DNA of 64,000 nucleotides from Vitrella brassicaformis CCMP3155 (taxonomy: Eukaryota; Protista; Chromerida), in the NCBI GenBank assembly GCA_001179505.1, contig CDMY01000831.1, forward strand, positions 186,001 to 250,000, given 5' to 3'. Both the position numbers and the translations under genes were made by a program. Every line of letters starts with the position of its first letter. Position 1 is the stretch's first letter. Below, piece after piece: positions 4,135-53,260 of this stretch. Under the pieces are notes generated by a model, which had not been told where the DNA came from, did not search any database, and worked only from the letters and a program-made list of their open reading frames with translations.

Positions 4135-7100
4135 CTAAATAGTGGGCCCCGACTGTCTGTAGTCGATGTCGCTTCTACAGATGGGGCACTGCGTGTTGCC
4201 CCGCCACGGCGCATACCTCTTGTGCCAGCAGGTGACATACAAACATCGGTGGCGGCAGGTGGACGGCGCCTTGCCGATGAGCACCACCGTCCGCTGCTCG
4301 GCCTGGCACACCGCACACAACTCGTCCTCCTCCCTGTCGTCGATGCGCCGCTGCAGCTGCCGATTCTCCTCTTGGTGCGCCCGAAGCATGAGCCCGTCGA
4401 GCTGCTGAATGCGGCCCATGACGCGGGCGAGGAAGGCCGTCGCCTCGGCCACCGTGTGGATGGACGAGAGGCAAGCCATTGAAGGCCTGCACAGAGAGAC
4501 AGACAGTGGACAGACAAACAGATAGACAGCCGATGTGTGTGTGTGTGTGATCGCACCTTTCCCGACTGTCCATCTTGATGGCATCGACACGCGACTGGAG
4601 CTTCCCCACGTCATGCGAGAGGCACCTCAGCCGACGATCCAGCTCACCGCTGCCCAGCTGCTGCTCGACCCTGAATGCCACACACAGACGGAGTCACACG
4701 CATGGCGGTGTGGGAATCCCCGCTGTCTCTTTGCTCACTCTGAGATGCGCTGCGTGAGTTGCGCAAGCTGTTCGTCGAGCCCCAAACCACCAATGCCATC
4801 ATCTACACCAGCACCAGACGAGCTGCCCCCCTCCGGCGGCCCACAGGGGCCACCCGCATCGGCCGAGGAAGACCCTGATGCCGCTGCTGCCCCCTCAGTG
4901 GCGGTGTCCTGCTCCCTCTCTCTGTGGCGCCACATGTGGCGCTTCCACTGCTGTCGATCCGCTGCTGAGCTGTTGGATCTTGGCGAGTGCGGCGTCGTAG
5001 ATGGGCTGCAGGGCGGCCTTCTCGGCCTCGGCCTCAGCGGAAAACTGCCGGATGCAACGCCGCCCGCACGAACCACCTCATGCAACTCGTCAACAGACCT
5101 AACACACATAACACACACGACACGAGGTGCATCAAGGTCCCCGCCCTCTGTGTGTGTGCGGTTGGTCTCACTTTGGTGCGTTGCGCATGGCGACTTCCTT
5201 CTCGTGTATCAATTTGGCCTTTCGCTGCTCCAGCGAGGCGATGGCCGCCAACTTGCCGTCCAACTCGTGACGCAGCCTGCACACCCATCCCAAGACACAC
5301 ACGTGCTGACTGCAGTGAGAGTGCCGCCCATTCATCGCTTTTCCGGCTCACTCCTGCAGTCTATCGACAGCCTGCTGCTTCTGCTCTAAGGCCATGGCGC
5401 GTGCAGGATCGACGCTGTGGGCATCATCGGCAGCCGCGGCCGCTTCCCGCCTTTGCCGCTCCGTCGGGTCGTGGCTGTGATGTCCACCGCCCTGCCCCGA
5501 GCCCCACTCAGACCAAGCAGCCTCCATGCCCCTCACCCAGTCAGAGTCATCAGAAGGACTGCTGGGCGGTGACGACAAGGTCACGGCGGTGGTGCCGCTG
5601 CTCAACTCGCCCACACGAGAGCATCCATCAGCGGCAGCCGTTGCTGCGCCTCCGCTCTCCGTCGACAACGACGAGTGCTGCTTGAGGGGTGGGGTCACCA
5701 GAGGGGGGGCGGCGGGGCGAGGGGGGCGATGCTGCTGGCGATAAGCCATCCCACCAGTCACAGCAGGGCCACGTGTGCCGTCAGATGTGCCGCCGGCGGT
5801 GCTTGGCAGCGGCTGTGATGACACCGTCTCCCCAGATGGACTCGCAAACACAGAGGAGATCGCTTGTCCAGCCTGCTGTCGCGAGGGCGCATCAGCTGAG
5901 CCCGACCCGGCCCTTCTGCCCTTCTTCTTTCGGCGTCTCGCTGTCTGAGTCCACTGGCCGCCATCGTCTGCCATCGCCTCCTCCCGCTGCTGCTGATGAT
6001 GGTCGACTGAGATGCCAAATCCACCGCCAGGCATGATGGTGTCGTTGCTGCTGCTGGGTGTGACAGGGGGAGCGGCACTCTCCTCCGTGGCTGCGTCAGA
6101 TGCTGATGCTGCCGGGGTTGGTTGATCAGCTACCGTGTCTTTGGTATTCTTCCCCGGCCGCTGTCCTGCCCCATCAGCAGTCAATGCGTTGTCCTCTGGC
6201 TGATGACGGTGCGGCCGGCACTTCTTGGCTGTCGTCTTGGCTTCTTCCTGAGCAATCAGCAAGGCCATGTTCTGGTCGGCCCGCCGCTCGTCCTGGAGCC
6301 ACTGCCGATGCTGCCGCGATGGATGGATGACAAAGCACCAAAGTACTGACAGGCCGAGAGCAACAAGGATTCCAGCTCCAACCCACGGCGCCCACGGAGA
6401 GGACAGCTGCAAGCAAAAGAGAAGGAGAGAAAAGAGAGGCAGTGAGGACGCCTTGACGGTGTCCTTGGATCCTGCGTACCATTTCTCCGGTTGTCGGCAG
6501 CCGATGAAGGCCCGTCGCGTGGATGGGCAGCCTGGCAAGGAGCTCCTTGGCTGCTCCACTGATATTTTCATCCGAGCTCCCGGTGAGGCCCTCAAACGAC
6601 TGCTGACATCCCGCCTGCAGTCACCAAAACAGATGATGTGCGCCACGCAAGTGACTCAGTGAGTGCACCCTGCACCCCACCGTGCTGGCGATGGTGTTCG
6701 CGACTCGCTGGCCCAAGACGACGCTGTCCCTGACCAATCAATAGACTACCGACAAATGACAACAACACATGCACCAATGACGTTCGTTGCGTACCGGAGT
6801 ATCTCTTCGAAGGCCAGGACCATGTTGAGCAATTTGCCGAGCGTTATCTTGTTTGACATTTCCGTGTCCGTCGTAAGCTTCCCATTGAGGGGCACGAAAT
6901 GAGTCCCATTGAGGGGCACGAAATGGGGACTCGAGAAGGACTCACATGCCCTCTCGACACACCCGTTGTCGATGGCATACCTTCGCTGCACAAACAAAAT
7001 GCACACAGAAACAGGTGTCTGATTTGTCTGATTCCCTCCTTCAGCACACCTGCAATCCATCTCCTTTGTGAAGCAGCAGCGAACACGTGAAAAAGATCAA

Positions 7101-8216
7101 GTCTGAGCTGTCCTCGGCTTCCCGACGGCGGGTTACAGCGCTGAGGGCGTTCGGCAGCAGACCAGCATCGACTATGCTCACAAGAGTGAGACGAGATCCT
7201 CTGCTCCGCGACACGGGGCCTGATGGAAATGTAAACACAAACAGGAGTAAGTCGACGGAATTGTCCTCGCTATCCACTCTCACCTGCACATATGGTTGCC
7301 ATCACCAACATGCTCAGCAACTCCGCGGCCTTGGCCCAAATCACGTCGTCCCATGACAAGAGAAAGAGTGACAGCTTTTCCACCACCCCATGCTCGATAA
7401 GCGCATCAGCAATGCCCGGCAGCATCACAATACACTCACCTGGTCCAGTCTGTCCGATGCTCGACCACATCATTGGGATGGTGCCGAGCATCGATATTGC
7501 GGCCCTCGTGACAGACGGATGGGTGTTGCCCAGCAGCTGCAGCAGGGGCACAATGGCTGCACTGGTCACTACGTCATCCACCCACGGCAGGTGGCCGAGG
7601 ACGGCCGTCAAGGGACCCACAATGTCCTCCATGTCACTGCCTGGCAGCTCCAAAGTGCGGCTGAGGGTCTCGTTAAGCGACGAAAGAGCACCACATCTGA
7701 ACAGATAGACAGACAGACAGACAGCCACACAGGTGGGTCTGTTCATCTGGCCGTTCGGCCCCGCACTCACCGGGCGAGGGCATCAGCAGCCTCAGTGCCG
7801 CTCTCTGCTATCCGCTGCAAGAGAGTCAAAGCCTCGACTTGCACTGAATGGTGGTCACAGTCGGCGGCGACGGCAAGGACGGCCGTCCCATACCGAACAG
7901 CAACTTTTGCAGCGACATCACCCGGCTGTGTGCTGTCTGCAATGTCCTCTCTGATGGCCCGCAAGACGCTGATCTGCAGGGCAGTGTCGTTGCTCTCCAG
8001 CTGCAATGCCAGGGGACTGGGCGCTGCCTCTTCCACGCCTATGTCGTCATCAAGGACACCCACAGCCTTCTCAAAATCACCACTTTCGTCAGCAAATGAG
8101 GGGTCCACATCGTCCCTGTTGTCAAAGTCACCCAGAGGCTCCTCAAACTCACCGTTGTGACTCCTGATGGCTGGCGGCAGGCAAGCGAGCGTGACGACGA
8201 GCACAGCCGCCAACAT
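4135..8216 (-). CDS. ARM-TM-RING receptor-like E3 ligase, copy 1 (signal peptide, importin-alpha-like ARM ectodomain, TM, coiled coil, C3HC4-type RING with Cys>Tyr change)
   Basis: Hand-spliced in frame: MLAAVLVVTLACLPPAIRS...LESNDTALQISVLRAIRE...QVEALTLLQRIAESGTEAADALAR | CGALSSLNETLSRTLELP...EHGVVEKLSLFLLS | SIVDAGLLPNAL | RYAIDNGCVERACE | AGCQQSFEGLTGSSDENISGATKELL...GEM | (phase-0 intron 6407-6479) LSSPWAPWVGAGILVALGLSVLWCFVI...QQAVDRLQE | LRHELDGKLAAIASLEQRK | ... | CAVC...CRHRCLYVTC...CPICRSDIDYRQSGPTI*. Confidence 0.85.
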
Positions 8217-29059: not shown

Positions 29060-32000
29060 AGACAACGCGATCGGTCTGGCGCTCTCCTCCAAATCTTGCT
29101 CCAAATCATGAGCCGGACGCCATCTCCCTTCCATCCGATGGTCTTGTCGACCAACGTGGCTACAGTGATTTCCCTCAGCTGATCCCGTGTGTTGTGATCG
29201 GGTCTCTTGATGCTGTCGGCCGTGCTCTTTGCGCTGGCCCTTACCGCCACCCCGAGCGGCTCATTTCCTGCGGCTGACTTTGACGAAGCGGACGATGGAT
29301 TCATTGATGAGGAGGAGGATGGCGCCGACGAGCCGGCCCGTGTGCTGGAGGTGACCATGTCCTCTGAGGGGGCGCTCAGTATGTTGCGGGCCATCAGAGA
29401 GAACATTGCAGACAGCACACAGCCGGAGGAGGAGGCTCCACAATACGGTGGAGATCTTACTCGTCTGCTACAGACGCCAAACTTGACAGCGAACGTGGAA
29501 CGGGAAGCGGTCGACCTGCCAGTGCATATCGTAAGAGTAGGTGATCGGGTTGACGAAGCTGTGCTGGCAACTTTCGTGCAGCTGCTGGACCGTCACGACG
29601 ATAGCGTCTTTAGAGCGGCGACCTCCATGCTGGCCGGGATTCCCATTGCTGCATCTGAAGGGTCCGTGGGGGAAATTCATCGGGTAGTGGCCGCTGTTCT
29701 ATTCGAGCAGCAGGCGGTGTCAAAGCTATCGCGCTTGCTTTTGTCGCCATACGGCCCTGCAAGCAGTGATGCCATGTATGTCGCCCTGCTCGCCCTACAT
29801 CAGATAGCACGTGAGTCGGATGCAGCTGCACAAAGGCACCTCACTTGTCTGTCACTTGCCTGTTTGTGTGCATCAGGCGAAATTCCCGAGACGATTGCCA
29901 TCAGTATGAGACAGATCATGGATCGTGACGTCGTTCCGAATTTGAGGACGGTTTACCAAAGCCAAAGCGGGACAAATAATGTGTCCACTAGCGGTGATAT
30001 GTCAACAACAATGGCCACCTTGCTATTGTCGTGTAGCCTTGCGCTGAGTTTCGGACGAAAACTGGACAACGAAATGGCGGTGAGCGTCGGTATCTCTATG
30101 TTTATCTCTCTGTCTGTCTGTCTGTCCGTCTGTGTGTGTGTGTGTCTGTCTGTCTGCCTGTCTGTGTTGTGCAGGTTCGCTATGCAGTCGAGCACGGGTG
30201 TTTCGACGCAGCATGCGATGTGGTCGAGCACAAAACGGTCAGGAAAACGGCGGCGTACTCCACCCTTGTGATGTCCTTAGAAGCGGAAGCACTGCTTGAA
30301 TTGAAGTTGCTATCAGGCGGGTACGTTACGCATGAAGCCTTTGTAATGGTCACGATCACGGTGTCATGTTTGCAATCCATCAGGGCAAGTGAGGCATTCA
30401 GGAGGCGAGTCGCCAAGATCATCATGGGCAGGGTCTGGAACGCTTCGCATGACGCGTGACCGAGCTCATCGCTTGTTTTGTGGCTTCAGAGCAGCTGCAA
30501 GCGTGCCATCGAGAAGCGCGCCAGCGGCTCCGGGGATGGTGCCAGAAAAGCCAAGGCCATCGCGAGTTGGGTGCGCATGTATGAGGTCACTGGACTGTAT
30601 CGGCTGCCAAGACGCGATGATCTGGTGCGACACAAGAGGACAAAGAGCACCTGAAAGTACTGTTTCTCTCTCTCCTTGGCAGGTGTCCTCTCCTTGGGCA
30701 CTCTCGGCCGCTGTTGCCCTCTTCGCTGTCCTGCTCGGCCTGTCAGCACTGTGGCGCTTTGTTGTCCGTCCGGGGCAACAGCGTCGGCAGCAGCGTCTGG
30801 CCGAGGACGCAGCGGCACGGCTGATAGCTGAGGAGGAAGCAAAGAGGAGCAGAGGGCAGGGGAGGGGCCGCAGAGGTCATGCCAGGCAGCCCAATGCTGC
30901 TTCTGCCGCCCGTCGGCCGACGGCTCAGCCATTCTTCGCTGCTGCTGCCCATGACAGTGGGATCGCGTCTGCCACCACCACGTCCACTAGCAGCCACAGT
31001 GGCTGCCTGACACCCACTGCGGCAGCAAGCAGCGGTGGCTTTCAGCCAGCCTCCGTGTCTGGGGGTGGATCAGCTGATCAGCAGCAGCAAGAGCATCAGG
31101 TGGAGGCGATGGCAGATAGTGGCGGCCAGTGGACTCAGACCGCAGCGCGACACCGAAAGAAAAAGGGCAGAAGGGCCGGGTCGGGCTCGGCGGCCGATGG
31201 GTCAGCTTCACAACAGCTGGCTGGACAAGCGAGCACCTCTGTGTCTGCGAGTCCATCTGGGGAGACGGCGCCCCCACAGCCGCTGCCAAGCACCGCCGGC
31301 AGCATCTCTGGCGGCACACGTGGCTATGCTGTGACTGGTGGGATGGCCCATCGCCCGCAGCGTCGCCCCTTTCGCCCCGGCGCCCCCCCTCTGGTGACCC
31401 CACCCCTCAAGCAGCACTCGTCGTCATCGACAGAGAGCAGAGGCGCAGCACCGGCTGCTGCTGATGGATGCTTTCGTGTTGGGGGTCACGAAGGCGCGGA
31501 TTTTGCGGGCGAGTTGAGCAGCGGCACCACCGCCGTGACATTGTCATCACCGCCCAGCAGTCCTTCTGATGACCCTGAGTGGGTGAGGGGCATGGAGGCT
31601 GCTTGGTCTGAGTGGGACACGGGGCGGGGTGACGGCCATCACAGCCACGACCCGCCGGAGCAGCAAAGGAGAGCAGAGGCCGCGGCTGCCGATGACGCCC
31701 ACAGCGTCGATCCCGCACGCGCCATGGCCTTAGAGCAGAAGCAGCAGGCCGTCGACAGACTGCAGGAGTGAGCCGGAAAGGCGATGAATGGGCGGCACTC
31801 TCACTGCAGAACCACGTGTGTGTCTTGGCATGGGTGTGCAGGCTGCGTTGTGAGTTGGACGGCAAGTTGGCGGCCATCGCCTCGTTCGAGCAGCGCAAAG
31901 CCAAACTGATACGCGACAAGGAAACCGCAATGCGCAACGCACCCAAGTGAGACGAACCGCACACACAGAGAGGGCGGGGACCTTGATGCACCTCGTGTCG

Positions 32001-33170
32001 TGTGTCTTATGTGTGTTAGGTCTGTTGACGAGTTGGATGAGGTGGTTCGTGCGGGCGGCGTTGAGGGCATCCGGCAGTTTTCCGCTGAGGTCGAGGCCGA
32101 GAAAGCCGCACTGCAGCCCATCTACGACGCCGCACTCGCCAAGATCCAACAGCTCAGCAGCGGATCGACAGCAGTGGAAGTGCCACACAGAGAGAGGGAG
32201 CAGGACACCGCCACTGAGGGGGCAGCAGCGGCATCGGGGTCTTCCTCGGCTGATGCGGGTGGCCTCTGTGGGCCGCTGGAGGGGGGCAGCTCGTCGGGTG
32301 CTCGTGTAGATGATGACATTGGTGGTTTGGGGCTTGACGAACAGCTGGCGATGCTCACGCAGCGCATCTCAGAGTGAGCACAGAGACAGCGGGGATTCCC
32401 ACACCGCCATGCGTGTGACTCCGTCTGTGTGTGTGTGGCATTCAGGGTCGAGCAGCAGCTGGGCAGCGGTGAGCTGGATCGTCGGCTGAGGTGCCTCTCG
32501 CATGAGGTGGGGAAGCTCCAGTCGCGTGTCGACGCCATCAAGATGGACACTCATAACAAGTATGAAACAAGTACACACACATCGGCTGTCTATCTGTTTG
32601 TCTGTCCACTGTCTGTCTCTGTGCAGGCATTCGATGGCTTGCCTCTCGTCCATCCACACGGTGGCCGAGGCGACGGCCTTCCTCGCCCGCGTCATGGGCC
32701 GCATTCAGCAGCTCGACGGGCTCGTCATTCGGGCGCACCAGGAGGAGAATCGGCAGCTGCAGCGGCGCATCGACGACAGGGAGGATGACGAGTCGTGTGC
32801 GGTGTGCCACGACGGGCGGCGGACGGTGGTGCTCATCGGCAAGGCGCCGTCCGGCTGCCGCCACCGATGTCTGTGTGTCACCTGCTGGCACAAGAGCTAT
32901 GCGCCGGGGCGGGGCAGCACACAGTGCCCCATCTGCAGAAGCGACATCGACTACAGACAGTCGGGGCCCACCATTTAGACGATTTGTGGGGTGTACAGCT
33001 GGTGGGTTCATGTTAGTCTGTCGGGTGGAGGAGAGCTGCTGTAAGGGCGTTGCAGAATGGGATGCAGCCCCATTCACTCGAGGCGATGCTGACTGCACGT
33101 GTGTGAGGGTGGGATGATTAGTGTATTTGTGTAGTTCATGACGCTGCATGATCTGTTCTCCTTTTCGGCT
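29060..33170. repeat. Inverted duplication; partner at about 49345-53410
   Basis: The upstream (acaacgcgatcg...aaatcatgagccgga.gcc...gtgatttccctcagctgatc), tail exons/introns and 3' flank (cgatttgtggggtgtacag...gcagccccattcactcgaggcgatgctgactgc) of copy 2 match the reverse complement around copy 5. Confidence 0.85.
29210..32978 (+). CDS. ARM-TM-RING receptor-like E3 ligase, copy 2 (apparently intact, canonical RING)
   Basis: MLSAVLFALALTATPSGSF signal, acidic linker, ARM exons (FVQLLDRHDDSVFRAATSML; QIMDRDVVPNL; VRYAVEHGCFDAACDVV; SSCKRAIEKR...VTGLYRLPRRDDL), then | VSSPWALSAAVALFAVLLGLSALWRFVV TM, coiled-coil exons and CAVC..CRHRCLCVTC..CPIC. All joins are GT-AG and in frame. Confidence 0.87.
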
Positions 33171-33220: not shown

Positions 33221-33470
33221 GCACGGTCCTTCTGAGGGCAATGGTGTCCTGTCTGTCACTTCCTCACTGTAGATGAATCGCACTCCGGCCATCCATCCAT
33301 CCATCCATCCATCCATCCGTTCTTGCCATGTCGTTGTTTGACATCTGAGGACGGGAGCTGCGATTGAGACTGGCACGTTCGACCGGTGTGCGGGACGTGA
33401 TGAAATAAAGCGACAAAAGCCATCAGAAATGAAAACAGAAGTCCTGCCTGCCTTGATGTTGGCGGCTGCG
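33221..33470. repeat. Inverted copy of 8200-8449 (UCP stop codon, UCP 3' flank and copy 1 upstream region)
   Basis: gcacggtccttctgagggca...cttcctcactgtagatgaatcgcactccggccatccatcc...gtgatgaaataaagcgacaaa..catcagaaat is the reverse complement of 8225-8449. Confidence 0.9.
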
Positions 33471-36400
33471 CTCGTCGTCACGCTGGCCTCCTTGTCGCCA
33501 GCCGTGAGCGGCGATCTTCATAGGGATGAGGTGCACGGTCTCATGAAGCAGCTGCGTGAGGTCATCGCCGACAGCACACGGCCGGACCACATTGCTGCAG
33601 GCGTTGCGGAGCGCTCCGGGGCGGCCGTCGGCGCTCTGCTGGGAGGAGCATTTGAGACGGCTCTGCAGCTGGAGGCATCAAGGCTGCTGACGTCAATCGG
33701 GAAGGCCGGCACCCAGGCCGTTGGGGCCCTCATACGGTAGTGTTGACACAGAGATATAAAGAGAGGCATTCTGGGTGTGTCTGTGTCAGGGTGGGTGTCA
33801 TCTCTTCTCTTGTGAGGGCCATCAAGCGTGCTGTAGACCTCCCAGACGAAGAGCTTGCCTCAGCCATCGTCATGCCCTTGCACCAGGTTGTGCTCGTGGC
33901 CGATGAGAATGGCTTACCGTGGAAGGATGAGCTGTTCGAGGCCGACGGGCTGCCTCCGCTCGTTCGGCTGCTGGACCACCAGCACGAGGAGGTCAAGAGA
34001 GCCGCAACCACCATCATCAGGAAGCTCCAATTCGCTCTGTGTGTGGCTCCAAGACCTGCGTGTGTTGATGTGGCCTACACCTTGTTCGAGCATGGGGCGC
34101 TCAAGAAGCTCTCGGCATTGCTGTTACGGCCCGATGTCGAGATGCGTCACAATGCCGTTGTCATTGTAGAACACATCTTGATGCCCATACTTGATGACCT
34201 TCGTAAGATGGAACACCCACACCAACCACTGCAGGGCACCACAACCCTCTCTTTGTTTGTGTATTTGTTTGTTTGGTCCAACTGTGTGTGATCGATATAT
34301 CAGCCGAGCGGCCTGGGCTGCAGCAAGCCGTGATTGAGACCATCATCGATTCTGAAGTGTTGCCCAAGCTGGCAGTCGCCGCATCAGGCAGCCATGTTGG
34401 CCGAGGAAGCCATGCAGCTGCCTACATCCTGCCGTATCATCGTGTGTGTAACCTGCTGATACACAGGGGGAATGACACCCAGGTGAGGTGGCAAGGAAAG
34501 AGACAACAGCTCTTCTTAATTTCTCTCAATCTTCCTCTGGATGTGTCTGTGTGTGCGTTGCGTTGGATGCAGCAAGTCTACGCAGCTGCTCACGGATGCA
34601 TTGAAAAGGCGTGTGTCTTCCTGACGGCGCGTGTCAAGCAGATGCAGGCGCCGTTGTCGGACTGGGATTACTTTGACACTCTCCTGGTCGACTCCTTGGG
34701 GGGTGCCCTCAGGTCCACTCCTTCGCCTTGGGACACCTTCTACCAGAATTCGCTCAGTGGCAGTTTGAGGCAGCGAGCCACAGCCGCCATCCTTACGACG
34801 GTCTCACTGCACTGACCACACGAGGGGCAAAACACCCGAATCGCACGGATCGTCTGTCGTCTTGTGTATCTACCTGTCTGCAGCATGGTTGTGGGCAGTC
34901 GATCAAGGAGCTCGTTGAGCACCCCACTGACGCCATCAGCATGAGAGCCAAAAGGGCCATGGAGCTATTGGAGGCAAACGTGGAGAGCATGGAGGACGAC
35001 AGTGACGACAGTGACGACAGTGGCGACAGTGACGGCACGGACACGGATTCCCTCCTTGACGAGTCGGACGTCAGTATCCTCGATGAACCTGAGGGCCCCG
35101 TTCAGTTCACCGGGCGGGCAGCGGCATCCATCAAGATGTTGACCCTGCAACTGAGGAGCGACGACAAGCAGCAGCTACTGGGTGCGTTGGTGGGAGTGGT
35201 TGAGGGCACTTTCCGAAGCGAGCGTGCGACCACCAAGCAGCTGCTGGTCGCACAGTATGCCGATCAGCTTGGGGAATCTGTCCTGCGTGTCTTGTGCGAG
35301 ACAGAGGACGATGACGTCCAGCGGGCAGCGGGCGAGGTCCTGGGCCTTTTTGCCGGGAGCGGCCCTCGGGTGGTCGATGTGTTCATCCGGTGAGTGAGTG
35401 AGTGAGTGAGTGAGTGCAGGGGGTGGGTACTGTACGCTGGGCGATCGATTGTGGGCTCGTCAATTGTCTCAGGTTTGGCGCGATCCCCTCTCTTGTCCAG
35501 GCTCTCAGACGCAGCACGGAGCTCTCAGGCAGACACGCAGCTGGTGCCCTCAGTCCCCTCAACATTTTACGCCCCCTGCAGCTCCTCTTGCGTGAGGCTG
35601 GTGCTCAGTCGACCAATCAGCTGATGGAGGCGGGCGGGCTGCCCCTCCTAGCCAAGCTGCTGGACCATAGTGACCTGACGGTGAAGGCAGCGGCCGTCCG
35701 CATTCTCGCAGTGACCCCGGGCGGCCACCGAGTCTTGTCAACCCGAATTATCGGCATCGCTATCATCCTTGCCGCCTTAGTCATGCTGCCGCGTTTGTGG
35801 CGCTTCCTCTACGTCCACCTTTTGCGGCTGCGGCAGCACCGACGGGAGCAGCAAGCCGAGCGGCACCAGAGAGACCTGCTGGCTGACGAAGAGGCGGAGA
35901 AGAACAGGGACAATGGCAGAGGCGGCAAGGGGCGACAACAGACCACCGTCCGCAGACGGCCCGTCGCTCAGCCTTCCTCTGGTAGTGATGACCAGGGTGG
36001 GCGGCTCTCCTGTACAACAGCCAGCAGCAGCGGCAGCAGCAGTGGCCGCCAGACACCCAGTGTGCTGCGAGAGGAATCGACCACCGTGGCTGAGATGGAG
36101 TCTGATGACGGCCAGTGGAAGGCGGTGACGCGCAATCGGTCGAACAGGACCAAGAGGGGCGGCAGCACTCAAGCGACTTCCTCTCACCAGACGCCAACCA
36201 GCGCAAGCAGTAGCCTGACGACGCCGTCCAGCAGCCCTGTGACGACGAACGGTGAGGGGCATCCGTCTGAAGGCGTCAGCAGTGCCACATCGTCGGCCGA
36301 TCAGACGCCGCGCGACACTCTGCCGATAAGCGTCAGCATACCAAAGAGGCGGCGGGCGGCCGGGAGGGGCCTGGGGCTGACAACCATCGCACCACCGCCG

Positions 36401-37185
36401 CCATCGATGGGTGCGGCCCCTCCGACTCCCTGGCTGCCGTCAGCAGAGGACATCAGCAGCTCGACGGCTCATCGGCCGCACCTTCCCCCGCCCCCGCCCC
36501 CGCCCCCCAGCCCTCCTGAGGTCTCGTGTGGTGCTGCCCTCAGCGATGTGTGGCCCTCATCGGGGAGTTCGGTGCGTGCTCAAGCTGGTCTGTCCCACAA
36601 CAGGGGCCCCCCGCCTCTCGTCAAGTGCGGCCATGGCCATGGCAGCCAGCTGCAAGCAACGGCCGAGTACGAACGCACACAGACACAGGAAGGACACCTT
36701 TTCATTTATTGTGTCGTTTCAGAGTGGGCCGATTTCGTGACGAGCAGCGCCAGACGAGTGACACGCCCCAGCAGCCCCACCGTCTCTCACCCTCGGCCAG
36801 CGCCAGCACCACCAGCACCACCAGCAGCAGTGCGGCGGCCCTCGAATTGCTCACCGAGGAGCCCAGGAGCCAAGACAGCACACCACAACAAGAGACAGCA
36901 GCGGAGCAGGCCATCAGAGACGGCACGTGTGTCGCCTGCCATGAGCCGGGTCCAACAGTGGTCTTTTTCCCCTGCAAGCAGCGGTGTCTGTGTGCCGCCT
37001 GCTGGGCCATCATGTCCCGCAACCACAAGCGGGCTAAAGGGGAGAGGGAGCGGCTGAGGGCTGAGGGAGTGCCGGACAAGGCGATGGATATGGCCGTGCA
37101 GATCGATGCGGAGCTCAAGTGCCCGGCGTGTCTCACCAAGGCCGACTATGCCACCGATCTGAAGGGCATCAAAGTTACCACATGA
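33429..37185 (+). CDS. ARM-TM-RING receptor-like E3 ligase, copy 3 (extended ectodomain, Pro-rich tail, split RING)
   Basis: MKTEVLPALMLAAALVVTLASLSPA signal; ARM exons (DGLPPLVRLLDHQHEEVKRAATTII; QAVIETIIDSEVLPKL; QVYAAAHGCIEKACVFL; HGCGQSIKELVEHPTDAISMRAKRAMELLE), acidic linker, second ARM unit, TM IIGIAIILAALVMLPRLWRFLYV. Intron 36667-36722 joins the tail in frame to CVAC..PCKQRCLCAAC..CPAC. Confidence 0.85.
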
Positions 37186-42872: not shown

Positions 42873-45800
42873 TCATTCGGGCTGCGATATGAAGGGATTT
42901 GAGACCCACTGCAAGGCCTCCGCCATTGTCCCGGCGAAATCCACCGCCTTGCTACACTGCTCGCACCGATATTCCGGCTCGTCCAGCAGCTCCAGCTGCT
43001 CCGCACCCTCACCCTGCGCCAGCACCACGTTAGCCCGTTTCCTATCGGCGTTCTCGGCCCTCACCCGGCCGAGTCTCCGCTGCCAGGCCTGTTTGCGGTT
43101 GGCATAGCAGGTGGTGCAGATGTGCATGTGTCTGCAGGGGATGTACATGACGGCCGCGGGGCCGTGCTCGCCGAAACAGACCAGACAGTCCACCATAGAC
43201 GCACTGCTGCTGGCAGCACCGGCGGCGGCAGGTGGGAGTGGGTGGAGTCCCTCATTGAAGCTGCTGGACGGCGGGCAGGCAGGAGACCTGACACAAGCAC
43301 CAGCGAAACAGTCAATCCGTCATCTCCGTGACGCCTCGATCCTCACCTGTCGGGGAATGTCACTGGCCGCCGAACGCCGCCACCACCACAAGACGCAAAC
43401 CTAAGTGAAGGAGACACGGCACAATGGTCGGCAATGAGATGGCCTCCCTCCCTGCCCAATGCTCTGTGTCCTCACCTGCCGCACTTGACGAGTGGCGGGG
43501 GGCCCCTGCGGGACGCACCATCATCAGCACGCACCGAACTTCCCGATGAGGGCCACTCATGGCTGAGGGCAGCACCACACGAGACCTCAGGAGGGCTGGG
43601 CGGAGGGGGCGGGGGCGGGGGAAGGGGCGGCCGATGAGCCGTCGAGCTGCTGATGTCCTCTGCTGACGGCAGCCAGGGAGTCGGAGGGGCCGCGCCCATC
43701 GATGGCGGCGGTGGTGCGATGGTTGGCAGCCCCAGGCCCCTCCCGGCCGCCCGCCCCCTCTTTGGTATGCTGACGCTCATCGGCAGAGTGTCGCGCGGCG
43801 TCTGGTCGGCCGTCGATGTGGCAGTGCTGAGGTCTCCAGAGGGATGCCCCTCACTGTCTCTCGTCGGAGAGCTGCTGGGCGGCGTCATGGGATGGCCATT
43901 GCTGAAGTCGTTTGGCGCCTGTTGTGGGGGCGCCGCCAAATGAGATGAGCTCGGTAGACCAGCCTCCGGTCGCAAAGCTGACCCACCAGTTCTGCCTGGC
44001 CGCCCGCCTTTTCTGCCCTTCTTCTTTCGGTGTCCCTCTGTGGTCTGGGTCCACTGGCCGCCACTGTCTGCCATCGCCTCCACCTGATGCTGATCAGCCG
44101 ATCCATCCCCAGACATGGTGGGTGGCTGGAGGTCACTGCTGCTAGTGGCCCTGGTGCTGGGTGTGGCAGTGGAGGCACTCTCACTGTCATCGTCAGCAGC
44201 AGCGGAGGATGGCTGAGCCGTCGGCCGGCGGGAAGCAGAAGCGTTGGGCTGCCTGGCATGGCCTCTCTGGCCCCTCCCCTGCCCTCTGCTCCTCTCTGCT
44301 TCCTCCTCAGCTATCAGCTGTGCCGCTGTGTCTTCGGCCTGACGCTGCTCACGGCTTTGGTTCCATCGGTCGATGTGGGGCTGGAGAAACCACCACAGCA
44401 CGGAGGCGACAGCCACAAGAAGGATTCCGCCCCCAATCCACGGCGCCCAAGGTGAGGACAGCTGCAAAGGAAGAGTGGTCGGCCTTGTAACGGTGCCTTT
44501 TGGGCCCTGCGTACCGTTTCCCCGGTTGTTGTTCGCCGACGCAGGTCCGCCGCGTAGACGGACAGCGTATTCGTAACAGCCTGTGCGGCGCTGCTGGCAA
44601 TGTTAGCATCAGGGCTCCTTGCAATGTATTCAATCGACTGCTGGCATCTCTGCAGTCACCAAAACAGACCGTGTGCGCCACGCAAGTGACTTAGTGAGTG
44701 CACATCGCATCCGACCATGCTGCCAACGATAGTCTTTGCGACTTCCTGCCCCAAAACGTCGCTGTCCCTGATCAATCAATGCACCACCAACAAACAGACA
44801 GGATGCCTCACCCTTGTGTGGATGGCGTTCGTTGCGTACCTGAGTATCTCTTTGAAGGCCAGGAGCAATGTTGTGATAAGGCCCTCTTCAATGCGCTCGT
44901 GTACAGGTAAGCCCCCCGATATCGGGGTCGAGATGAATGTACACGCCGCCTCGAGGCACCCGTTGTCGACGGCGTACCGACGCTGAACACACAGCAGTGC
45001 ACATCACAATGTACACCGCATGATTCCATTTATGGCATGGGCACATAGTCGAGAAGCGTACCTGTCCTTCGTCCCCCTCGAACAACAGAGAGCTGCACAC
45101 TGCATGCACTAAAGGCATGCAGTCGAGGCCTTTGAAAGCGTTGGGCAGGATGCGGTTTGTGACTATGGCCGTAGGACTGAGGCCAGACTTGCGCCCTACG
45201 ATGTAGTCTGGAGTAAAGTCCGCACACAAACACGCACAGAAGTGAATGACAAACAGCGCCACCTACCTTCGCATATGCGCGTCACCGCCATCGTGAATAA
45301 CAAGACGGCGGCGCGGTCCCGAGTCGAGTTGTCAGATGACAGAAGCAAGGCCGACAGCTTTTCCACACCCCCATGGTTGACAAGAGCATCAGCAAGACCT
45401 GGTGCTGTCACAGCACACGATCCGTCGGGCGATGTGTGGACCGGAATCCTGGCGAGCATCACCACTGCAGCATTCTTGACCGACGAGTGGCTGTGGTCCA
45501 GCAGCTGAAACAGGGGCAAAATGGTAGTAGCAGTCTCGGGCGGACCATAGATCCACGGCAAGTGCTTCAGGATGGCAGTCAGAGGCCTCACGATGTCCTC
45601 CATGTCGCTGTCTGGCAGCTCTAAAGTGCGGCTGAGGGTATCGACAAGCGACGAATGGGTGCCACCTCTGACAAACAGTCTGAAACAGACAGACAGACAG
45701 ACAGTCACACTCGTGCCAGCCGACCGGTGCCACCTCGACTCACCGAGCGAGGGCCTCAGCGGCCTCAGTGCCGGTCTCTGCCACCTGCTGCAAGACAGTC

Positions 45801-46600
45801 GCCGCCTCAACCTGCACTTCACGGTGGTCGAAGTCGCCGACGAGGCCAAGGATGGCCGGCCCAAACTGACCGACAATCTCGGCAGCAGCTTTCTCTGGGA
45901 ATTTGCTCTTCTTGACCACGGAGGGGATCCCCCGCAGCGTCCGTAGCTGCTCGTGCCTCTCATCACTGTTCAGCTCATTTATCAGTTTCTCCGCCGCCCT
46001 GTCTTGGACGGCGTTATAACGATCCCCCAGCCGGGCAAGCGCAGCCTCGTGCGCCTCATCCCCTCGGGGAAGGTGATGCAGGACGGTGCTCAAAGGTTCC
46101 GCAACGTCCATCATTCTGTCATCCGGCAAATCCGTTGCGTGAATGAGAGTCTCGATGACGGACGACCGAGCACCAACACTATACAGGACACCAGACACAG
46201 ACAGCAACACACATGGGTCCTGCCTGTCAACCAACGGACAAGCATCCGACCTCTCACCCACTCACCGGGCGAGGGCGTCAGCAGCCTCAGTGCCGGTCTC
46301 TGCCATCATGGCCAGCAGAGCCGCCGCCTCAACTTGGACTGCAGGGTGTCCAAAGTCGCCGGCGAGGGCAAGGAGAGCCTGACCATAGAGACCAGCGTAT
46401 CGTGCAGCATCCTCCTGCGGCCGTAAGCCCTCCCCGATGTCCTCAAAGAGGGACTGCAACACGTGGAGCTGCTTGAGGCTGTCGTTGCTCTCCAGCTCAC
46501 GCAGCAGGGGCAACTGTCGGCCTTCGCACGTTTCCGCAGAGGAAGCGATGAGCACGGCGAGCACCAGAGAGGAGCCGCAACAGGAGAAGCCGAAGGGCAT
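42873..46600 (-). CDS. ARM-TM-RING receptor-like E3 ligase, copy 4 (duplicated first ARM unit, Pro-rich tail, split RING with all 8 ligands)
   Basis: MPFGFSCCGSSLVLAVLIASSA signal-like; two LxSxxxxxQL...QVEAA.LL...AETGTEAA.ALAR units; TLSRTLELPDSDMEDIVRPL exon; RYAVDNGCLEAAC; RCQQSIEYIARSPDANIASSAAQAV...GET | LSSPWAPWIGGGILLVAVASVLWWFL; two small introns join in frame to CLVC..PCRHMHICTTC..CEQC. Confidence 0.85.
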
Positions 46601-49503: not shown

Positions 49504-52500
49504 CTAAATGGTGGGCCCCGACTTTCTGTAGTCGATGTCGCTTCTGCAGATGGGGCACTGCGTGTTGCCCCTCCCCGGCGCATAGCTCGTGTGCCAGCAG
49601 GTGACACACAAACATCGGTGGCGGCAGGTGGACGGCGCCTTGCCGATGAGCACCACCGTCCGCTGCCCGTCGTGGCACACGGCACACGACTCGTCGTCCT
49701 CCCTGTCGTCGATGCGCCGCTGCAGCTGCCGATTCTCCTCCTGGTGCGCCCGAAGCATGAGCCCGTCGAGCTGTGAATGCGGGCCATGACGCGGGCGAGG
49801 AAGGCCGTCGCCTCGGCCACCGTGTGGATGGACGAGAGGCAAGCCATCGAAGGCCTGCACAGAGAGACAAACAGATAGACAGCCGATGTGTGTGCCCTTG
49901 TTTCATACCTGTTATGGGTGTCCATCCTGATGGCATCGACACGCGACTGGAGCTTCCCCACCTCATGCGAGAGGCACCTCAGCCGACGATCCAGCTCACC
50001 GCTGCCCAGCTGCTGCTCGACCCTGAATGCCACACACAGACAGTCACACACATATGGCGGTGTGGGAATCCCCGCTGTCTCTGTGCTCACTCTGAGATGC
50101 GCTGTGTGAGTTTCGCCAGCTGCTCGCCGAGCCCCAAACCACCAATGTCATCAGCTACACCAGCACCCGACGAGCTGCCCTCCAGCGGCCCACAGAGGCC
50201 ACCCGCATCAGCCGAGGAAGACCCCGATGCCGCTGCTGCCCCCTCAGTGGCGGTGTCCTGCTCCCTCTCCATGTGGGGCTCTTCCACTGCTGCCGATCCG
50301 CTGCTGAGCTGCCGGATCTTGGCGAGTGCGGCGTCGTAGATGGGCTGCAGGGCGGCCTTCTCGGCCTCGGCCTCAGCGGAAAACTGCCGGATGCCCTCAA
50401 CGCCGCCCGCACGAACCACCTCATCCAACTCGTCAACAGACCTGAAACACATAACACACACGACACGAGGCGCGTCAAGGTCTCCGCCCTCTGTGTCTGT
50501 GTGTGTGGGTGCGGTTCGTCACACTTGGGTGCGTTGACCATTGCGGTTTCCTTCTCGCGTATCAGTTTGGTCTTTCGCTGCTCCAGCGAGGCGATGGCCG
50601 CCAACTTGCCGTCCAACTCACAACGCAGCCTGCACACACATGCCAAGACACACACGTGCTGACTGCAGTGCGAGTGCCGCCCATTCATCGCTTTTTCGGC
50701 TCACTCCTGCAGTCTGTCGACAGCCTGCTGCTTCTGCTCTAAGGCCATGGCGCGTGCGGGATCGACGCTGTGGGCATCATCGGCAGCCGCGGCCTCTGCT
50801 CTCCTTTGCCGCTCCGTCGGGTCTTGGCTGTGATGTCCACCGCCCTGCCCTGAGCCCCACTGAGACCAAGCAGCCCCCACACCCCTGACCCACGCAGAGT
50901 CATCAGAAGGACCGCTGGACGACGACGACCGGCCCGCGAAGCTCTGGCCTCGTTGAGCGCCGACAAAGGCATTACCATGAGCGGCAGCCGGTGCTACGCC
51001 GGCTCTCTCCGGCGCCTGCTGCCGGTCGGCATAAGGCGACGAGTGATGCTCAGGCGATGGGCTCACTAGAGGAGGGACGAGGGGGCGAGGGGGGCTCTTC
51101 CTCATGGCGGTGCTTGGCGCCTGCTGTCGCGGCGCCGTCTCCCGAGATGAGCTCGATTGACCAGCATCCTGTCGTGAAGTCGCTTGAGTGGTCCCGCCTT
51201 TTCTGCTCTTCTTCTTCCTGTGTCGCGCGGCGGCTGTCCATTCGCCGCCGTCGTCTGGCGTCGGCTCCTCTTGATGCTCCTCCTGCTGCAGAGGATGAGC
51301 CGATCCATCGCCAGACGAGGTGGGTGTCAGGCAGCCACTGTGGCTGCCGCTTGATGCCGCAGTGGAGGCCATCCCACCGTCATCGCCAGCAGAAGAGGAT
51401 GGCTGGTCAGCGGGCCGGCGGGCAGCAGAAGCAGCATTGGGATGCCTGGCATGACCTCTGCGGCCCCTCCCCTGCCCCCTGTTCCTCACTGTTTCCTCCT
51501 CAGCTATCAGCTGTGTCGCTGTGTCTTCGGCCTGGCGCTGCTGCCGACGCTGCCAGTGACGCTGCAGCCAGGGACCGACAACAAAGCGCCACAGTGCCGA
51601 CAGGCCGAGCAGGACAGCGAGAGTACCTGCGACCCAGGGCGCCCAAGGAGAGGAAAGCTGCAAAGGCAAAGGCTATTGGGAAAGACAGAAGGAGAAAGTT
51701 TTCTGTCTGTTGTTTCTTGTGTCGTACGAGATCAATGCTTCTTGGCAGCCGATACAAGTCAGTGACCTGCCAGACACACAGGGACACGCCAGACACACCA
51801 TGCAGATCCACGCAGCTGTGCATACTACTATATCGTCATCGGCGTAGGCCCAAGGAGATCTGATCGCCAAACAATCGCTCGTTTTGGCTCGCTTTGGATC
51901 ACGGCCGCACGCGAATTCTTCGGTCAGTTCTTGGATGGCTCGCTTACAGCTGCTCTGAAGCCACAAAGGTGCAAAAAATGACACCGGTTAGGCGGCATCG
52001 TCTCAAGTGTGTCAGACCCTCATCTGAGACGAGATTCTCATCCTCAAGGCCGCACTTGCTCTGATTGATTGACAGGAGAGCATGGTCAGTTAACACGCAA
52101 GACATCCGCTGGCTCTCTCGCACCTGACAAATAAATTGGACAATACTGCCAGAGTATTCTTGACGTCCATGCGATCCTTGCTGGACTCCAGCAGGTCGCA
52201 TGCTACGCCGACACAGCCTTGGTCGACTGCATAGCTGACCTGCAACACACATACGAGACACACATGCATGAACACAGAATAGTGTGATCTACTCGCCCCG
52301 CCCCGCTCACCGCCGATTCATTTCCCCACTTCCATGGCAATAAACACGACGTAAAAGATAAACACGACATAAAAGGAATATATTCGGTAAGCGCCTTCTT
52401 GTGGCTTCCGGGTCCACAAGCCGTGATCGAATTCGGGATGACCTCAGCTTGGATCGTTTGCGCCATGCACGTGGGAATCGTCTGGGGGCGCGTGTCTGCC

Positions 52501-53260
52501 ACACATATTCGTGCATTGCAAGCAAGTGACAGACAGACAGACAGACAAACAGATGGCTTCAAGAGGTGCCTACCTTTCTACAGCCATTCGACTCACGTGC
52601 AGTCTGATGTAGGGCGGTCAGCGCGACGAATGTTGCATTCACGGCATAACTGCACATAAGGTGGTCGTTCGAAAGAAGTAAGGGCGACAGCTTCGACACC
52701 GCTCCATACTCGAAGAACACATCTGCCAGACCAGGCGGCGTCACGTGTGCAACCCCCCCTTGAACAAGTCCGTATGCGGTGGGAGTCCTGCTCAGGATTA
52801 ATGCCGCCGCTCTCACGACACGCTCATCGTTATGATCCAGCAGCTGCACGAAGGCCGTTGTAAGTAGGTGTATCCCCTCCTCGGTGAACGCCTCGGTGGC
52901 CCGAGCGCCGACTCGTGCCACCTGCACCAGCAGTTCGACTGCTTCGCGCGTGACGTGGCTGTCCTGAGTCTGTCCCAACAGATGGACGATGGTCCGCAAC
53001 GGATCAACATATCGCATAGCCTCCTCCGGGTGAACGCTCTCCGCTATATCCTCTGTGATGGCCCACAAGACTCTCAACTGCTGGGCAGTGTCATGGCTCT
53101 CCAGTGACATGGTCACTCGCCTCGAACAAATATTGGGCCGCCTCGTCGGCGCCATCGTCGTCATCGTCAATGAATCCATCTCCTCGTCGAAGTCAGCCGC
53201 AGGAAATGAGCCGGTCGGGGTGGCGATAAGGGCCAGCGCAAAGAGCAGGGCCGACAGCAT
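49504..53260 (-). CDS. ARM-TM-RING receptor-like protein, copy 5 (1-nt deletion puts the RING out of frame: RING-less variant, pseudogene or assembly error)
   Basis: MLSALLFALALIATPTGSF signal; ARM exons including VSYAVDQGCVGVACDLLESSKDRMDVKNTLAVLSNLF; TM LSSPWAPWVAGTLAVLLGLSALWRFVV; coiled-coil exons. Near 49773 the sense strand reads cgcattcacagctc versus cgcattcagcagctc in copies 1 and 2. Confidence 0.82.

What the first reader, a model, noticed from the sequence alone, without database searches (positions are those of the whole stretch)
33429..35730. Ectodomain looks like an importin-alpha body that lost the IBB domain and the NLS-binding Trp/Asn ladder
Seen: motifs in importin-alpha order. 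QVEALTLLQRIAESGT resembles QFEAAWALTNIASGT; GLPPLVRLLDH..EEVKRAA; IVDAGLLPNAL / IIDSEVLPKL resemble AVIDAGIIPPL; VSYAVDQGCVGVACDLL...TLAVLSNLF resembles IRYLVxQGCIKPLCDLL...LEGLENIL; GCGQSIKELVEH...AMELLE followed by an acidic run resembles ARM10 plus the acidic C-terminus. The importin-alpha sequences quoted are from memory. Established: importin-alpha binds NLSs through WxxxN residues and has an N-terminal IBB. Here a signal peptide replaces the IBB, and the W/N positions I could align are substituted. Inference: the fold was repurposed with a new, variable binding groove.
Basis: partly seen in the sequence, partly recalled or inferred. Interest (0 to 1): 0.72.

Follow-up and report, generated by a model that had tools for sequence, protein, structure and literature searches.

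The report
Importin-alpha-derived ectodomain on membrane RING protein
An expressed gene of the alga Vitrella brassicaformis puts a diverged copy of the nuclear-import adaptor importin-alpha behind a signal peptide, outside a membrane anchor. A RING finger sits on the cytosolic side, so an intracellular peptide binder seems to have become the outer domain of a receptor-like ubiquitin-ligase family.

Summary

**The gene.**
- It runs 33429-37185 (+), has 7 exons and is spliced in RNA-like contigs.
- Its product is identical to the public Vitrella brassicaformis protein P0151 (1096 aa).
- Layout: signal peptide, ARM module, acidic linker, half ARM module, one TM helix, disordered tail, C-terminal RING.

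Only 3 of the 6 quoted motif strings lie in 33429-35730. The other three come from paralogues A and E in the same window. This gene holds diverged equivalents of them.

**Evidence for descent from importin-alpha.**
- Profile-profile alignment is collinear (E 3e-13). The in-register score is 105, against 62 for the best shifted register.
- All natural PDB hits among the best 60 of the module profile are importin-alpha.
- Three intron positions and phases match Vitrella's own importin-alpha gene exactly, and a fourth is compatible (chance about 4e-6).

**What was lost.**
- The IBB domain is absent.
- The model shows about 8 repeats rather than 10.
- Every aligned Trp/Asn ladder residue but one Trp is replaced, and those columns are unusually variable.

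**Caveats.**
- Fold and embedding searches do not single out importin-alpha.
- This copy's RING has Gln at the His zinc ligand.
- dN/dS is 0.6-0.75 along the whole gene.
- Topology and function are untested.

The scan's first-stage notes already list the five-gene family on this window (s1-242722).

The parts
33429..33512 (+). Signal-peptide-like N-terminus (residues 1-28, MKTEV...SPAVSG)
   Evidence: First in-frame ATG after an upstream stop. Hydrophobic core scores KD 2.23. Small residues lie at -3/-1. Equivalent N-termini occur in paralogues P0152, P0001, P0003, P0004, P0025 and P0154. Exon 1 is joined to exon 2 in an RNA-like contig of run X6. No dedicated predictor was available.
33513..35006 (+). 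ARM module 1 (residues 29-417, exons 1-5), the importin-alpha-derived body. Introns: 33737-33789, 34203-34303, 34483-34572, 34801-34883.
   Evidence: Pfam Arm, 58.9 bits. hhalign to importin-alpha, E 3e-13 and collinear. AlphaFold2 model with pLDDT 78.7 and 21 helices, about 8 ARM units. Introns seen as GT..AG joints. Exon map is identical to P0151.
34711..34746 (+). In-frame 12-codon insert (residues 347-358, RSTPSPWDTFYQ) where paralogues and importin-alpha have a phase-2 intron: probable exonised intron remnant
   Evidence: P0002, P0001, P0003 and P0073 have a phase-2 intron here. P0151 has extra residues instead. The stretch begins GT and ends AG. It is present in an RNA-like contig up to 34735. 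The loop has low pLDDT, at residues 322-332 of the 27-445 model.
35007..35111 (+). Acidic linker (about residues 418-452, EDDSDDSDDSGDSDG...)
   Evidence: Read from the translation. pLDDT is below 50. It aligns with the acidic end of importin-alpha in A5, but it is low-complexity sequence, so homology is uncertain.
35112..35731 (+). Half ARM module 2 (residues about 453-631; intron 35390-35472), a duplicate of the first four repeats of module 1
   Evidence: 40% identity between 33794-34018 and 35477-35707. Pfam Arm E 4e-5. The same phase-2 intron in the Arg codon of ..I|R-xGxxxSLV occurs in both modules.
35747..35800 (+). Single transmembrane helix (I637-L650, followed by PRLW)
   Evidence: KD 2.47, and the only hydrophobic segment between the ARM region and the RING. 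A strongly basic stretch follows on the C-terminal side.
35801..36927 (+). Low-complexity Ser/Thr/Pro-rich cytosolic tail (intron 36667-36722)
   Evidence: Composition. 54-57% identical to the tail of paralogue D. The intron is seen as a joint in runs X1 and X6.
36928..37131 (+). C-terminal RING-like finger (residues 1012-1079) with Gln1029 (cag, 36979-36981) at the position of the His zinc ligand
   Evidence: Pfam zf-C3HC4_3 scores 21.1-26.6 bits, below the 27-bit cutoff. Ligand pattern. Paralogues P0001, P0004, P0013 and P0002 have His there.
4138..8216 (-). Paralogue A (public protein P0003, 1129 aa)
Evidence: tblastn and exon map.
29210..32978 (+). Paralogue B (signal peptide, ARM, TM, tail, RING)
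   Evidence: Translations and tblastn.
42876..46600 (-). Paralogue D (public protein P0001, 1037 aa; half module plus full module)
49507..53260 (-). Paralogue E (public protein P0004, 934 aa)

Best explanation
The gene encodes a type I membrane protein of Vitrella brassicaformis.

**Layout.** A cleavable signal peptide sends an armadillo-repeat solenoid of about 600 residues into the secretory lumen or to the cell surface. One helix spans the membrane. A long disordered tail ending in a RING finger stays in the cytosol.

**Origin of the solenoid.** It descends from an importin-alpha gene duplicate. That duplicate lost the IBB domain, about two internal repeats and the Trp/Asn NLS-binding ladder, and then multiplied into a Vitrella-only family.
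- Shown here: the gene model and its expression, ARM identity, homology to importin-alpha, the shared introns, and the loss of the IBB and the ladder.
- Inferred: the topology.

**Proposed mechanism (inferred, untested).** The concave face of the solenoid binds an extended ligand or the outer part of another membrane protein. The cytosolic RING then recruits an E2 to ubiquitinate the receptor or its bound partner for sorting or degradation, as in receptor-like transmembrane E3 ligases.

**This copy.** Its RING has Gln in place of the His ligand, so it may be a weak or inactive ligase. It could still work through partners or as a binder only.
For: **Gene model and expression.**
- The seven-exon model translates exactly to public protein P0151 of Vitrella brassicaformis CCMP3155.
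- Five of its six introns are seen as GT..AG joints in contigs of runs X6 and X1.

**ARM identity.**
- Pfam Arm, 58.9 bits.
- AlphaFold2 model with pLDDT 78.7 and pTM 0.76, all-helical, about 8 three-helix units.
- VIA gives Z 22-23 to ARM proteins, including Kap60 at Z 22.7.

**Importin-alpha descent.**
- hhalign of the family module (A3) against importin-alphas (A4): probability 97.9, E 3.2e-13. It is one collinear alignment, columns 35-397 against 92-504.
- The global mode gives E 3e-17. The in-register score is 104.9, against 62.3 for the best shifted register.
- All natural proteins among the top 60 PDB hits of the module profile are importin-alphas, E 1.5e-15 to 2e-9, aligned from the start of ARM1.
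- Among 141 non-family ARM proteins, the best single-domain scores go to importin-alpha-like P0044 and to Vitrella's own importin-alpha P0073.
- In an independent MAFFT alignment, three introns coincide in column and phase between P0073 and family genes. A fourth, in phase 1, is compatible.
- By simulation, three or more exact matches have a chance of 4e-6.

**Losses.**
- No IBB hit.
- Ladder residues are substituted and those columns are hypervariable.

**Topology.**
- There is an N-terminal hydrophobic signal and exactly one TM segment between ARM and RING, followed by a basic stretch.
- Family members P0152 and P0154 are a signal peptide plus two modules with no TM or RING, which is the layout of secreted proteins.

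**Range.** All named members of the family come from Vitrella; a few cluster members are unnamed JGI/IMG or MMETSP sequences.
Against: - **Fold searches do not single out importin-alpha.** Kap60 ties with designed ARM proteins, Armc8, p115 and axonemal ARM proteins.
- **The language-model feature search points elsewhere.** Its nearest clusters are ARMC8, vimar/RAP1GDS1 and PUB-type, not importin-alpha.
- **The reciprocal search is weak.** An importin-alpha HMM ranks family members only 71st or lower of 139 ARM proteins, at 11-19 bits per domain. Raw similarity is therefore weak, and the case rests on register, motifs and introns.
- **Canonical repeats may explain part of the signal.** Designed consensus ARM proteins outscore natural importin-alphas. 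Part of the signal is simply 'canonical ARM'.
- **Pfam Arm_3 does not hit at the C-terminal repeat**.
- **The RING is imperfect.** It is below Pfam's cutoff and lacks the His ligand.
- **The whole gene evolves fast.** dN/dS of 0.6-0.75 along its length also fits relaxed constraint.
- **Untested points.** No signal-peptide or topology predictor and no experiment was available, and no ligand is known.
Confidence: 0.62

Rival explanations
1. The ectodomain is a generic armadillo solenoid with no special tie to importin-alpha. On this view the motif resemblance reflects the shared ARM consensus, to which importin-alpha is simply the closest natural protein.
For: - Designed consensus ARM proteins are the best hits everywhere.
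- The exon-2 profile alone scores beta-catenin and importin-alpha-3 equally.
- Fold search gives ties.
- The feature search favours ARMC8, vimar and PUB.
- The importin HMM ranks the family low.
Against: - The in-register collinear alignment scores 105, against 62 when shifted.
- The N-cap aligns with ARM1, and the ARM9 motif Y.V..GC....C.LL and ARM10 align in place.
- Three exact shared intron positions and phases with the Vitrella importin-alpha gene have a chance of 4e-6.
Confidence: 0.12
2. The protein works inside the early secretory pathway rather than at the cell surface. The luminal solenoid would capture extended or unfolded polypeptides, and the cytosolic RING would mark them or their carriers for degradation. 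This would be a single-chain analogue of the Hrd3/SEL1L-Hrd1 pair.
For: - The topology inference is the same as for the best explanation.
- Importin-alpha-type grooves bind extended peptides (established knowledge).
- HspBP1, a relative of the ER-luminal factor SIL1, appears among the fold matches at Z 17.6.
Against: - A lineage-specific, fast-diverging, mosaic multigene family is atypical of housekeeping quality control.
- Soluble two-module members with no retention signal that I recognised exist.
- There are no localisation data.
Confidence: 0.15
3. The family is decaying, or is evolving neutrally as a recently amplified gene cluster with little function. On this view P0151 is an expressed but functionally eroding copy.
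For: - dN/dS is 0.6-0.75 over the whole gene against its closest paralogue.
- Zinc ligands are lost in P0151 (His to Gln) and in copy A (Cys to Tyr).
- One intron has been exonised.
- One 90%-identity cluster holds a family fragment together with a protein annotated as carrying a reverse-transcriptase domain.
Against: - The reading frame is intact over 1096 codons and 7 exons. Transcripts are correctly spliced.
- Core module residues are conserved across members that are only 25-35% identical.
- The module folds with good confidence.
- dN/dS is still below 1.
Confidence: 0.08
4. The topology is the reverse, or not membrane-spanning as inferred. The N-terminal hydrophobic stretch would not be a signal peptide, and the ARM region would be cytosolic like every known importin-alpha.
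For: - No signal-peptide predictor was run.
- As far as I know, ARM repeats are almost always cytosolic or nuclear (general knowledge).
Against: - One TM helix lies between ARM and RING, so the two must be on opposite sides. A RING needs cytosolic E2 enzymes.
- The basic cluster follows the TM helix.
- N-terminal signals are conserved in at least 7 members, and TM-less members also have them.
Confidence: 0.05

Closest known systems
Importin-alpha (karyopherin-alpha; Pfam IBB + Arm repeats + Arm_3), including Vitrella's own copy CEM29194.1 (P0073)
   Same: - The ARM solenoid is collinear from the ARM1 cap to ARM10.
- Shared motifs: Q.EA..L..IA..G, Y.V..GC....C.LL and H(P/A/E).(D/E).I.
- Three exact intron positions and phases are shared, and one more is compatible.
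   Different: - No IBB domain.
- About 8 repeats rather than 10.
- The Trp/Asn ladder is replaced.
- A signal peptide, a TM helix and a RING have been added.
- Raw similarity is weak, at 15-18% identity.
Receptor-like single-pass RING E3 ligases (PA-TM-RING proteins such as GRAIL/RNF128 and RNF13; RNF43/ZNRF3). Comparison from established knowledge.
   Same: Signal peptide, protein-binding ectodomain, one TM helix and a cytosolic RING. This suggests recognition outside the membrane and ubiquitination inside.
   Different: - The ectodomain is an alpha-solenoid, not a PA domain.
- The RING is of the C3HC4_3 type and sits at the far C-terminus, after a disordered tail of about 350 residues.
- No sequence homology was tested or expected.
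Plant U-box/ARM (PUB) ligases and other ARM-containing E3 systems (ARMC8 in the GID/CTLH complex, TRIP12)
   Same: An ARM solenoid serves as the substrate-binding part of a ubiquitin ligase. PUB-type and ARMC8 clusters are the nearest by feature search, and Armc8 gives Z 22.3 by fold.
   Different: In those proteins the ARM and the catalytic domain lie in the same compartment. Here a membrane separates them.
Hrd3/SEL1L with Hrd1 (ERAD). Comparison from established knowledge.
   Same: A luminal helical-repeat solenoid is coupled to a cytosolic RING.
   Different: That system uses two polypeptides, Sel1-like repeats rather than ARM repeats, and a multi-pass ligase. It is conserved and is not an expanded family.

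Membership tests
Importin-alpha (functional karyopherin-alpha) | N-terminal IBB domain (PF01749) | tested here: not met
   No IBB hit in P0151 or in 8 other family members at E <= 0.01. The control importin-alpha P0071 gives 52 bits.
Importin-alpha (functional karyopherin-alpha) | Ten ARM repeats | tested here: not met
   The AlphaFold2 model of module 1 has 21 helices, about 8 units. hhalign leaves ARM3 and the ARM5/6 region of importin-alpha largely unmatched.
Importin-alpha (functional karyopherin-alpha) | Trp/Asn ladder on helix 3 of ARM2-4 and ARM6-8 (NLS binding) | tested here: not met
   Of the positions mapped through hhalign, only W147 (the ARM4 Trp) is kept. All the others are substituted and vary between paralogues.
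Importin-alpha (functional karyopherin-alpha) | Atypical C-terminal repeat (Arm_3, PF16186) | tested here: inconclusive
   Pfam Arm_3 gives only E 0.001, at residues 153-181, which is the wrong place. hhalign and MAFFT do align the last repeat with importin-alpha ARM10.
Importin-alpha gene lineage (descent, not function) | Collinear homology over the whole ARM body, better than shifted registers | tested here: met
   hhalign E 3.2e-13. Score 104.9 in register, against 62.3 for the next best.
Importin-alpha gene lineage (descent, not function) | Shared gene structure with an importin-alpha gene of the same genome | tested here: met
   Columns 176|177 (phase 0), 249|250 (phase 2) and 272|273 (phase 0) of A5 are shared with P0073. 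A phase-1 intron after ARM7 helix 3 is compatible. The chance of three or more exact matches is 4e-6.
Armadillo repeat (PF00514) | Score above Pfam's gathering cutoff | tested here: met
   58.9 bits against a cutoff of 20.6.
RING-type E3 ligase (zf-C3HC4_3, PF13920) | Eight zinc ligands in C3HC4 spacing, and a score above the cutoff | tested here: not met
   P0151 scores 21.1 bits against a cutoff of 27, and ligand 4 is Gln1029. Paralogue P0004 passes at 34.6 bits with all ligands. P0003 also passes at 27.6 bits but has Tyr at ligand 5.
RING-type E3 ligase (zf-C3HC4_3, PF13920) | E2-dependent ubiquitin transfer | not testable with these tools
   Needs an in vitro ubiquitination assay.
Type I (signal peptide, N-out) membrane protein | Cleavable N-terminal signal peptide | tested here: inconclusive
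   An n/h/c-region pattern with small residues at -3/-1 is conserved in paralogues. No dedicated predictor or experiment was available.
Type I (signal peptide, N-out) membrane protein | Single TM helix with a basic cytosolic flank | tested here: met
   There is one hydrophobic segment, 632-650 (KD 2.47), followed by PRLWRFLYVHLLRLRQHRRE.

The most novel reading that the evidence does not exclude
Vitrella exported a duplicate of its nuclear-import adaptor to the cell surface. There it became the rapidly diversifying, module-shuffled recognition domain of a repertoire of receptor ubiquitin ligases and secreted binders. This would be an alpha-solenoid counterpart of variable innate recognition receptors, used to sense partners, prey, pathogens or self.
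Probability: 0.15. Interest if true: 0.85.

Novelty: new variant of a known kind. Interest (0 to 1): 0.62.

Why it matters
Importin-alpha is a textbook cytosolic and nuclear protein, and as far as I know armadillo repeats are almost never found outside the cytosol.

This case shows gene-structure evidence for a clear evolutionary path from a nuclear-transport adaptor to the outer domain of a membrane RING protein family in a close algal relative of apicomplexan parasites.

It gives a natural example of an ARM peptide-binding scaffold that apparently works in the oxidising, secretory environment. That is of interest to those who engineer designed armadillo binders.

It also adds a new ectodomain type to receptor-like ubiquitin ligases. 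Two full-text searches found no description of the family, and a third, broader one returned only unrelated papers.

Tried and rejected
- **Exon 2 alone in the search for homologous proteins.** It found nothing because of the tool's length filter.
- **Exon-2-only profile.** It could not separate beta-catenin from importin-alpha. The full-module profile was needed.
- **Foldseek and VIA-align.** Both returned only ties among ARM proteins.
- **ESM-Atlas feature search.** It gave generic ARM clusters.
- **Reciprocal importin-alpha HMM search.** It ranked the family low, so I did not use raw similarity as an argument.
- **Pairwise dN/dS between P0151 and P0002.** It showed no excess specific to the ectodomain, so I do not claim positive selection.
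- **Plastid or periplastid targeting.** I considered and rejected it because the region after the signal peptide is acidic, unlike a transit peptide.
- **Acidic linker as homologue of importin-alpha's acidic tail.** It is low-complexity sequence and is present only in P0151 and P0002, so I left this open.
- **Disulfide geometry of the conserved Cys residues.** It could not be checked because model coordinates are not exposed.
- **Joined exon model.**
  - I joined the exons only inside local scripts. The purposes were to test equality with public proteins, to map introns and to build codon pairs.
  - The joined sequence was not printed, saved or sent to any search.
  - Every later search used the public protein id P0151.
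Full report
**What is there.**

The window is eukaryotic DNA with short introns and about 58% G+C. Protein names returned by the search tools identify it as Vitrella brassicaformis CCMP3155.

The finding lies in a seven-exon gene on the + strand. The exons are 33429-33736, 33790-34202, 34304-34482, 34573-34800, 34884-35389, 35473-36666 and 36723-37185.

Five of the six introns appear as GT..AG joints in assembled contigs of public runs X6 and X1, which behave as RNA. The translated model is letter for letter the public 1096-residue protein P0151, named 'RING-type domain-containing protein'.

The join was made only inside local scripts, for this equality test, for intron mapping and for codon pairs. 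All searches used exon references or the public id.

**Anatomy.**

| Residues | Feature |
|---|---|
| 1-28 | Classical-looking signal peptide |
| 29-417 | Armadillo module |
| about 418-452 | Acidic linker |
| about 453-631 | Copy of the first four repeats of the module |
| 637-650 | The only transmembrane helix, followed by a basic cluster |
| following the TM | Ser/Thr/Pro-rich tail of about 350 residues |
| 1012-1079 | C-terminal RING-like finger |

- The half-module is 40% identical to the first module over 80 residues. It carries the same phase-2 intron in an Arg codon.
- The finger scores below Pfam's cutoff. It has Gln1029 where paralogues have the His zinc ligand.
- One membrane helix separates the ARM region from the RING, so the two must lie on opposite sides of the membrane. 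With the N-terminal signal and the positive-inside rule, the ARM region should be luminal or extracellular. This is inference; no predictor or experiment was available.

**The observation.**

Only three of the six quoted motifs lie in 33429-35730. The other three come from paralogues A (about 7100-7900, - strand) and E (about 52100-52250, - strand).

The window holds five family members, A to E. This agrees with the scan's own first-stage note s1-242722.

This gene does carry diverged equivalents of every motif, in the same order.

**Is it importin-alpha? Evidence for.**

- (a) A ten-sequence alignment of the family module, compared by hhalign with five tool-supplied importin-alphas:
  - Pfam checked the IBB/Arm/Arm_3 content of those importin-alphas.
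  - The result is one collinear alignment from the ARM1 cap to ARM10: probability 97.9, E 3.2e-13, and E 3e-17 in global mode.
  - The in-register score is 104.9, against 62.3 for the best repeat-shifted alternative.
- (b) The module profile searched against all PDB sequences returns designed consensus ARM proteins first.
  - After them, every natural protein among the best 60 is an importin-alpha, at E 1.5e-15 to 2e-9.
  - These are aligned from the first residues of the ARM domain. Beta-catenin no longer appears.
- (c) The exon-2 profile was used to pull ARM proteins from 1.84 billion representatives.
  - Among the hits, the best single-domain scores outside the family go to importin-alpha-like P0044 and to Vitrella's own importin-alpha P0073.
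- (d) Gene structure. I mapped exons of P0151, P0001, P0003, P0004 and P0002 and of the importin-alpha gene P0073 (locus L001) by exact protein-to-genome matching. I then placed the introns on an independent MAFFT alignment, A5. The result is in the table below.

| Position in A5 | Phase | Sequence context | Shared by |
|---|---|---|---|
| 176\|177 | 0 | G...Q \| ..Y.V..GC | P0073, P0151, P0001, P0003, P0004 |
| 249\|250 | 2 | ..(I/L)L \| R | P0073, P0001, P0003, and P0002 by position |
| 272\|273 | 0 | Before the last repeat | P0073, P0151, P0003 (P0001 is one column off) |
| After ARM7 helix 3 | 1 | NIMA\|G against TICA\|G | Compatible; only gap columns lie between |

Random placement gives three or more exact matches with probability 4e-6.

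**Is it importin-alpha? Evidence against or neutral.**

- Fold searches tie Kap60 (Z 22.7) with designed ARM proteins, Armc8, p115 and axonemal ARM proteins.
- The Atlas feature search prefers ARMC8, vimar and PUB clusters.
- An importin-alpha HMM ranks the family only 71st or lower among 139 ARM proteins.

The family is therefore a very diverged descendant. Its origin is shown by register, hallmark motifs and introns, not by overall similarity.

**What was lost or changed.**

- No IBB domain.
- The AlphaFold2 model (pLDDT 78.7, pTM 0.76) has 21 helices, about eight units rather than ten. The gaps in the hhalign alignment fall in ARM3 and ARM5/6.
- The helix-3 Trp/Asn positions are all replaced, except W147 in the conserved LPW motif, which maps to the ARM4 Trp.
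- Those columns are more variable than other helical columns: 2.10 against 1.68 bits, permutation p 0.02, or p 0.0005 without W147. Surface exposure was not controlled for.
- Against its closest paralogue P0002, dS is 0.23. dN/dS is 0.6-0.75 in the ectodomain and 0.61 in the tail. The whole gene evolves fast, and no ectodomain-specific positive selection is shown.

**Family and range.**

- All named members come from Vitrella; some cluster members are unnamed metagenome or transcriptome sequences.
- They include TM-RING forms (P0151, P0002, P0001, P0003, P0004, P0013).
- P0025 looks like another TM-RING form. Its RING part seems to be annotated as a separate neighbouring gene.
- There are also signal-peptide-only forms with two modules (P0152, P0154).
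- Modules, tails and RING types are combined differently in different members.

**Most likely working.**

The protein is probably a receptor-like membrane protein. Its outer importin-alpha-derived solenoid would bind an extended ligand or the outer part of another membrane protein. Its cytosolic RING would direct ubiquitination.

In this copy the missing His ligand makes ligase activity doubtful. The rival readings are:
- a generic ARM origin;
- an ER quality-control role;
- a decaying gene family;
- a wrong topology.

**Novelty.**

Two full-text searches found no description of this family, or of any importin-alpha-like ectodomain; a third, broader search returned only unrelated papers. I rate it a new variant of known kinds: an importin-alpha paralogue and a receptor-like RING protein in a combination not described before.

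Noticed in passing
window 34711-34746: P0151 has 12 extra in-frame codons (RSTPSPWDTFYQ) exactly where P0002, P0001, P0003 and importin-alpha P0073 have a phase-2 intron. The stretch still starts GT and ends AG, and it forms a low-confidence loop. It looks like an exonised, shortened intron.
   Followed up: partly
window 36979-36981; copy A near 4200-4300 (-): RING zinc ligands are substituted in two family members: His to Gln1029 in P0151, and Cys to Tyr (CRHRCLYVTC) in copy A / P0003. Copies D and E, and P0013, keep all eight ligands.
   Followed up: partly
window 29210-32978 (+) versus 49507-53260 (-): Copies B and E are inverted duplicates. Their tails are about 72-80% identical at protein level, while their ectodomains are only about 40% identical. 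This suggests gene conversion of the tails or fast divergence of the ectodomains.
   Followed up: partly
window 33737-33789 and 35390-35472; copy D introns after residues 111 and 256: The family-specific phase-2 intron, inside the Arg codon of ..AL(I/A)|R-xGxxSSL, is present in both modules of P0151 and of P0001. Module duplication therefore happened at the DNA level, introns included.
   Followed up: yes
L001 1501-4204 (Vitrella importin-alpha gene, P0073): The annotated 768-residue importin-alpha has no Pfam IBB hit. It has a hydrophobic N-terminus (MRGVSAFFSTIWAAVCSLIW), two extra copies of the ARM1-2 region, and an intron-less first exon of 551 codons. It may be a divergent paralogue or a mis-annotated start, and the canonical importin-alpha of Vitrella was not examined.
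   Followed up: no
L002 1-2622: On contig CDMY01000552, the 629-residue family member P0025 (no RING) is followed immediately by a separately annotated 339-residue protein with zf-C3HC4_3. This is probably one gene split by the annotation. P0002 lies next to it, so this is a second tandem cluster.
   Followed up: no
protein cluster of P0022: A 90%-identity cluster joins family fragments with a 1727-residue Vitrella protein annotated as 'Reverse transcriptase domain-containing'. An ARM module may lie inside or next to a retroelement.
   Followed up: no
window 36526-37300 and beyond: An RNA-like contig of run X6 (2497 nt, depth about 270, against 5-25 over the rest of the gene) covers the last one and a half exons. 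It runs about 1.8 kb past the stop codon. Either the 3' UTR is long or a strongly expressed neighbouring transcript overlaps it.
   Followed up: no
window 35390-35415: The donor of intron 5 opens a short GTGA-GTGA... repeat (gtgagtgagtgagtgagtgagtga). It offers several alternative GT donors in a row.
   Followed up: no
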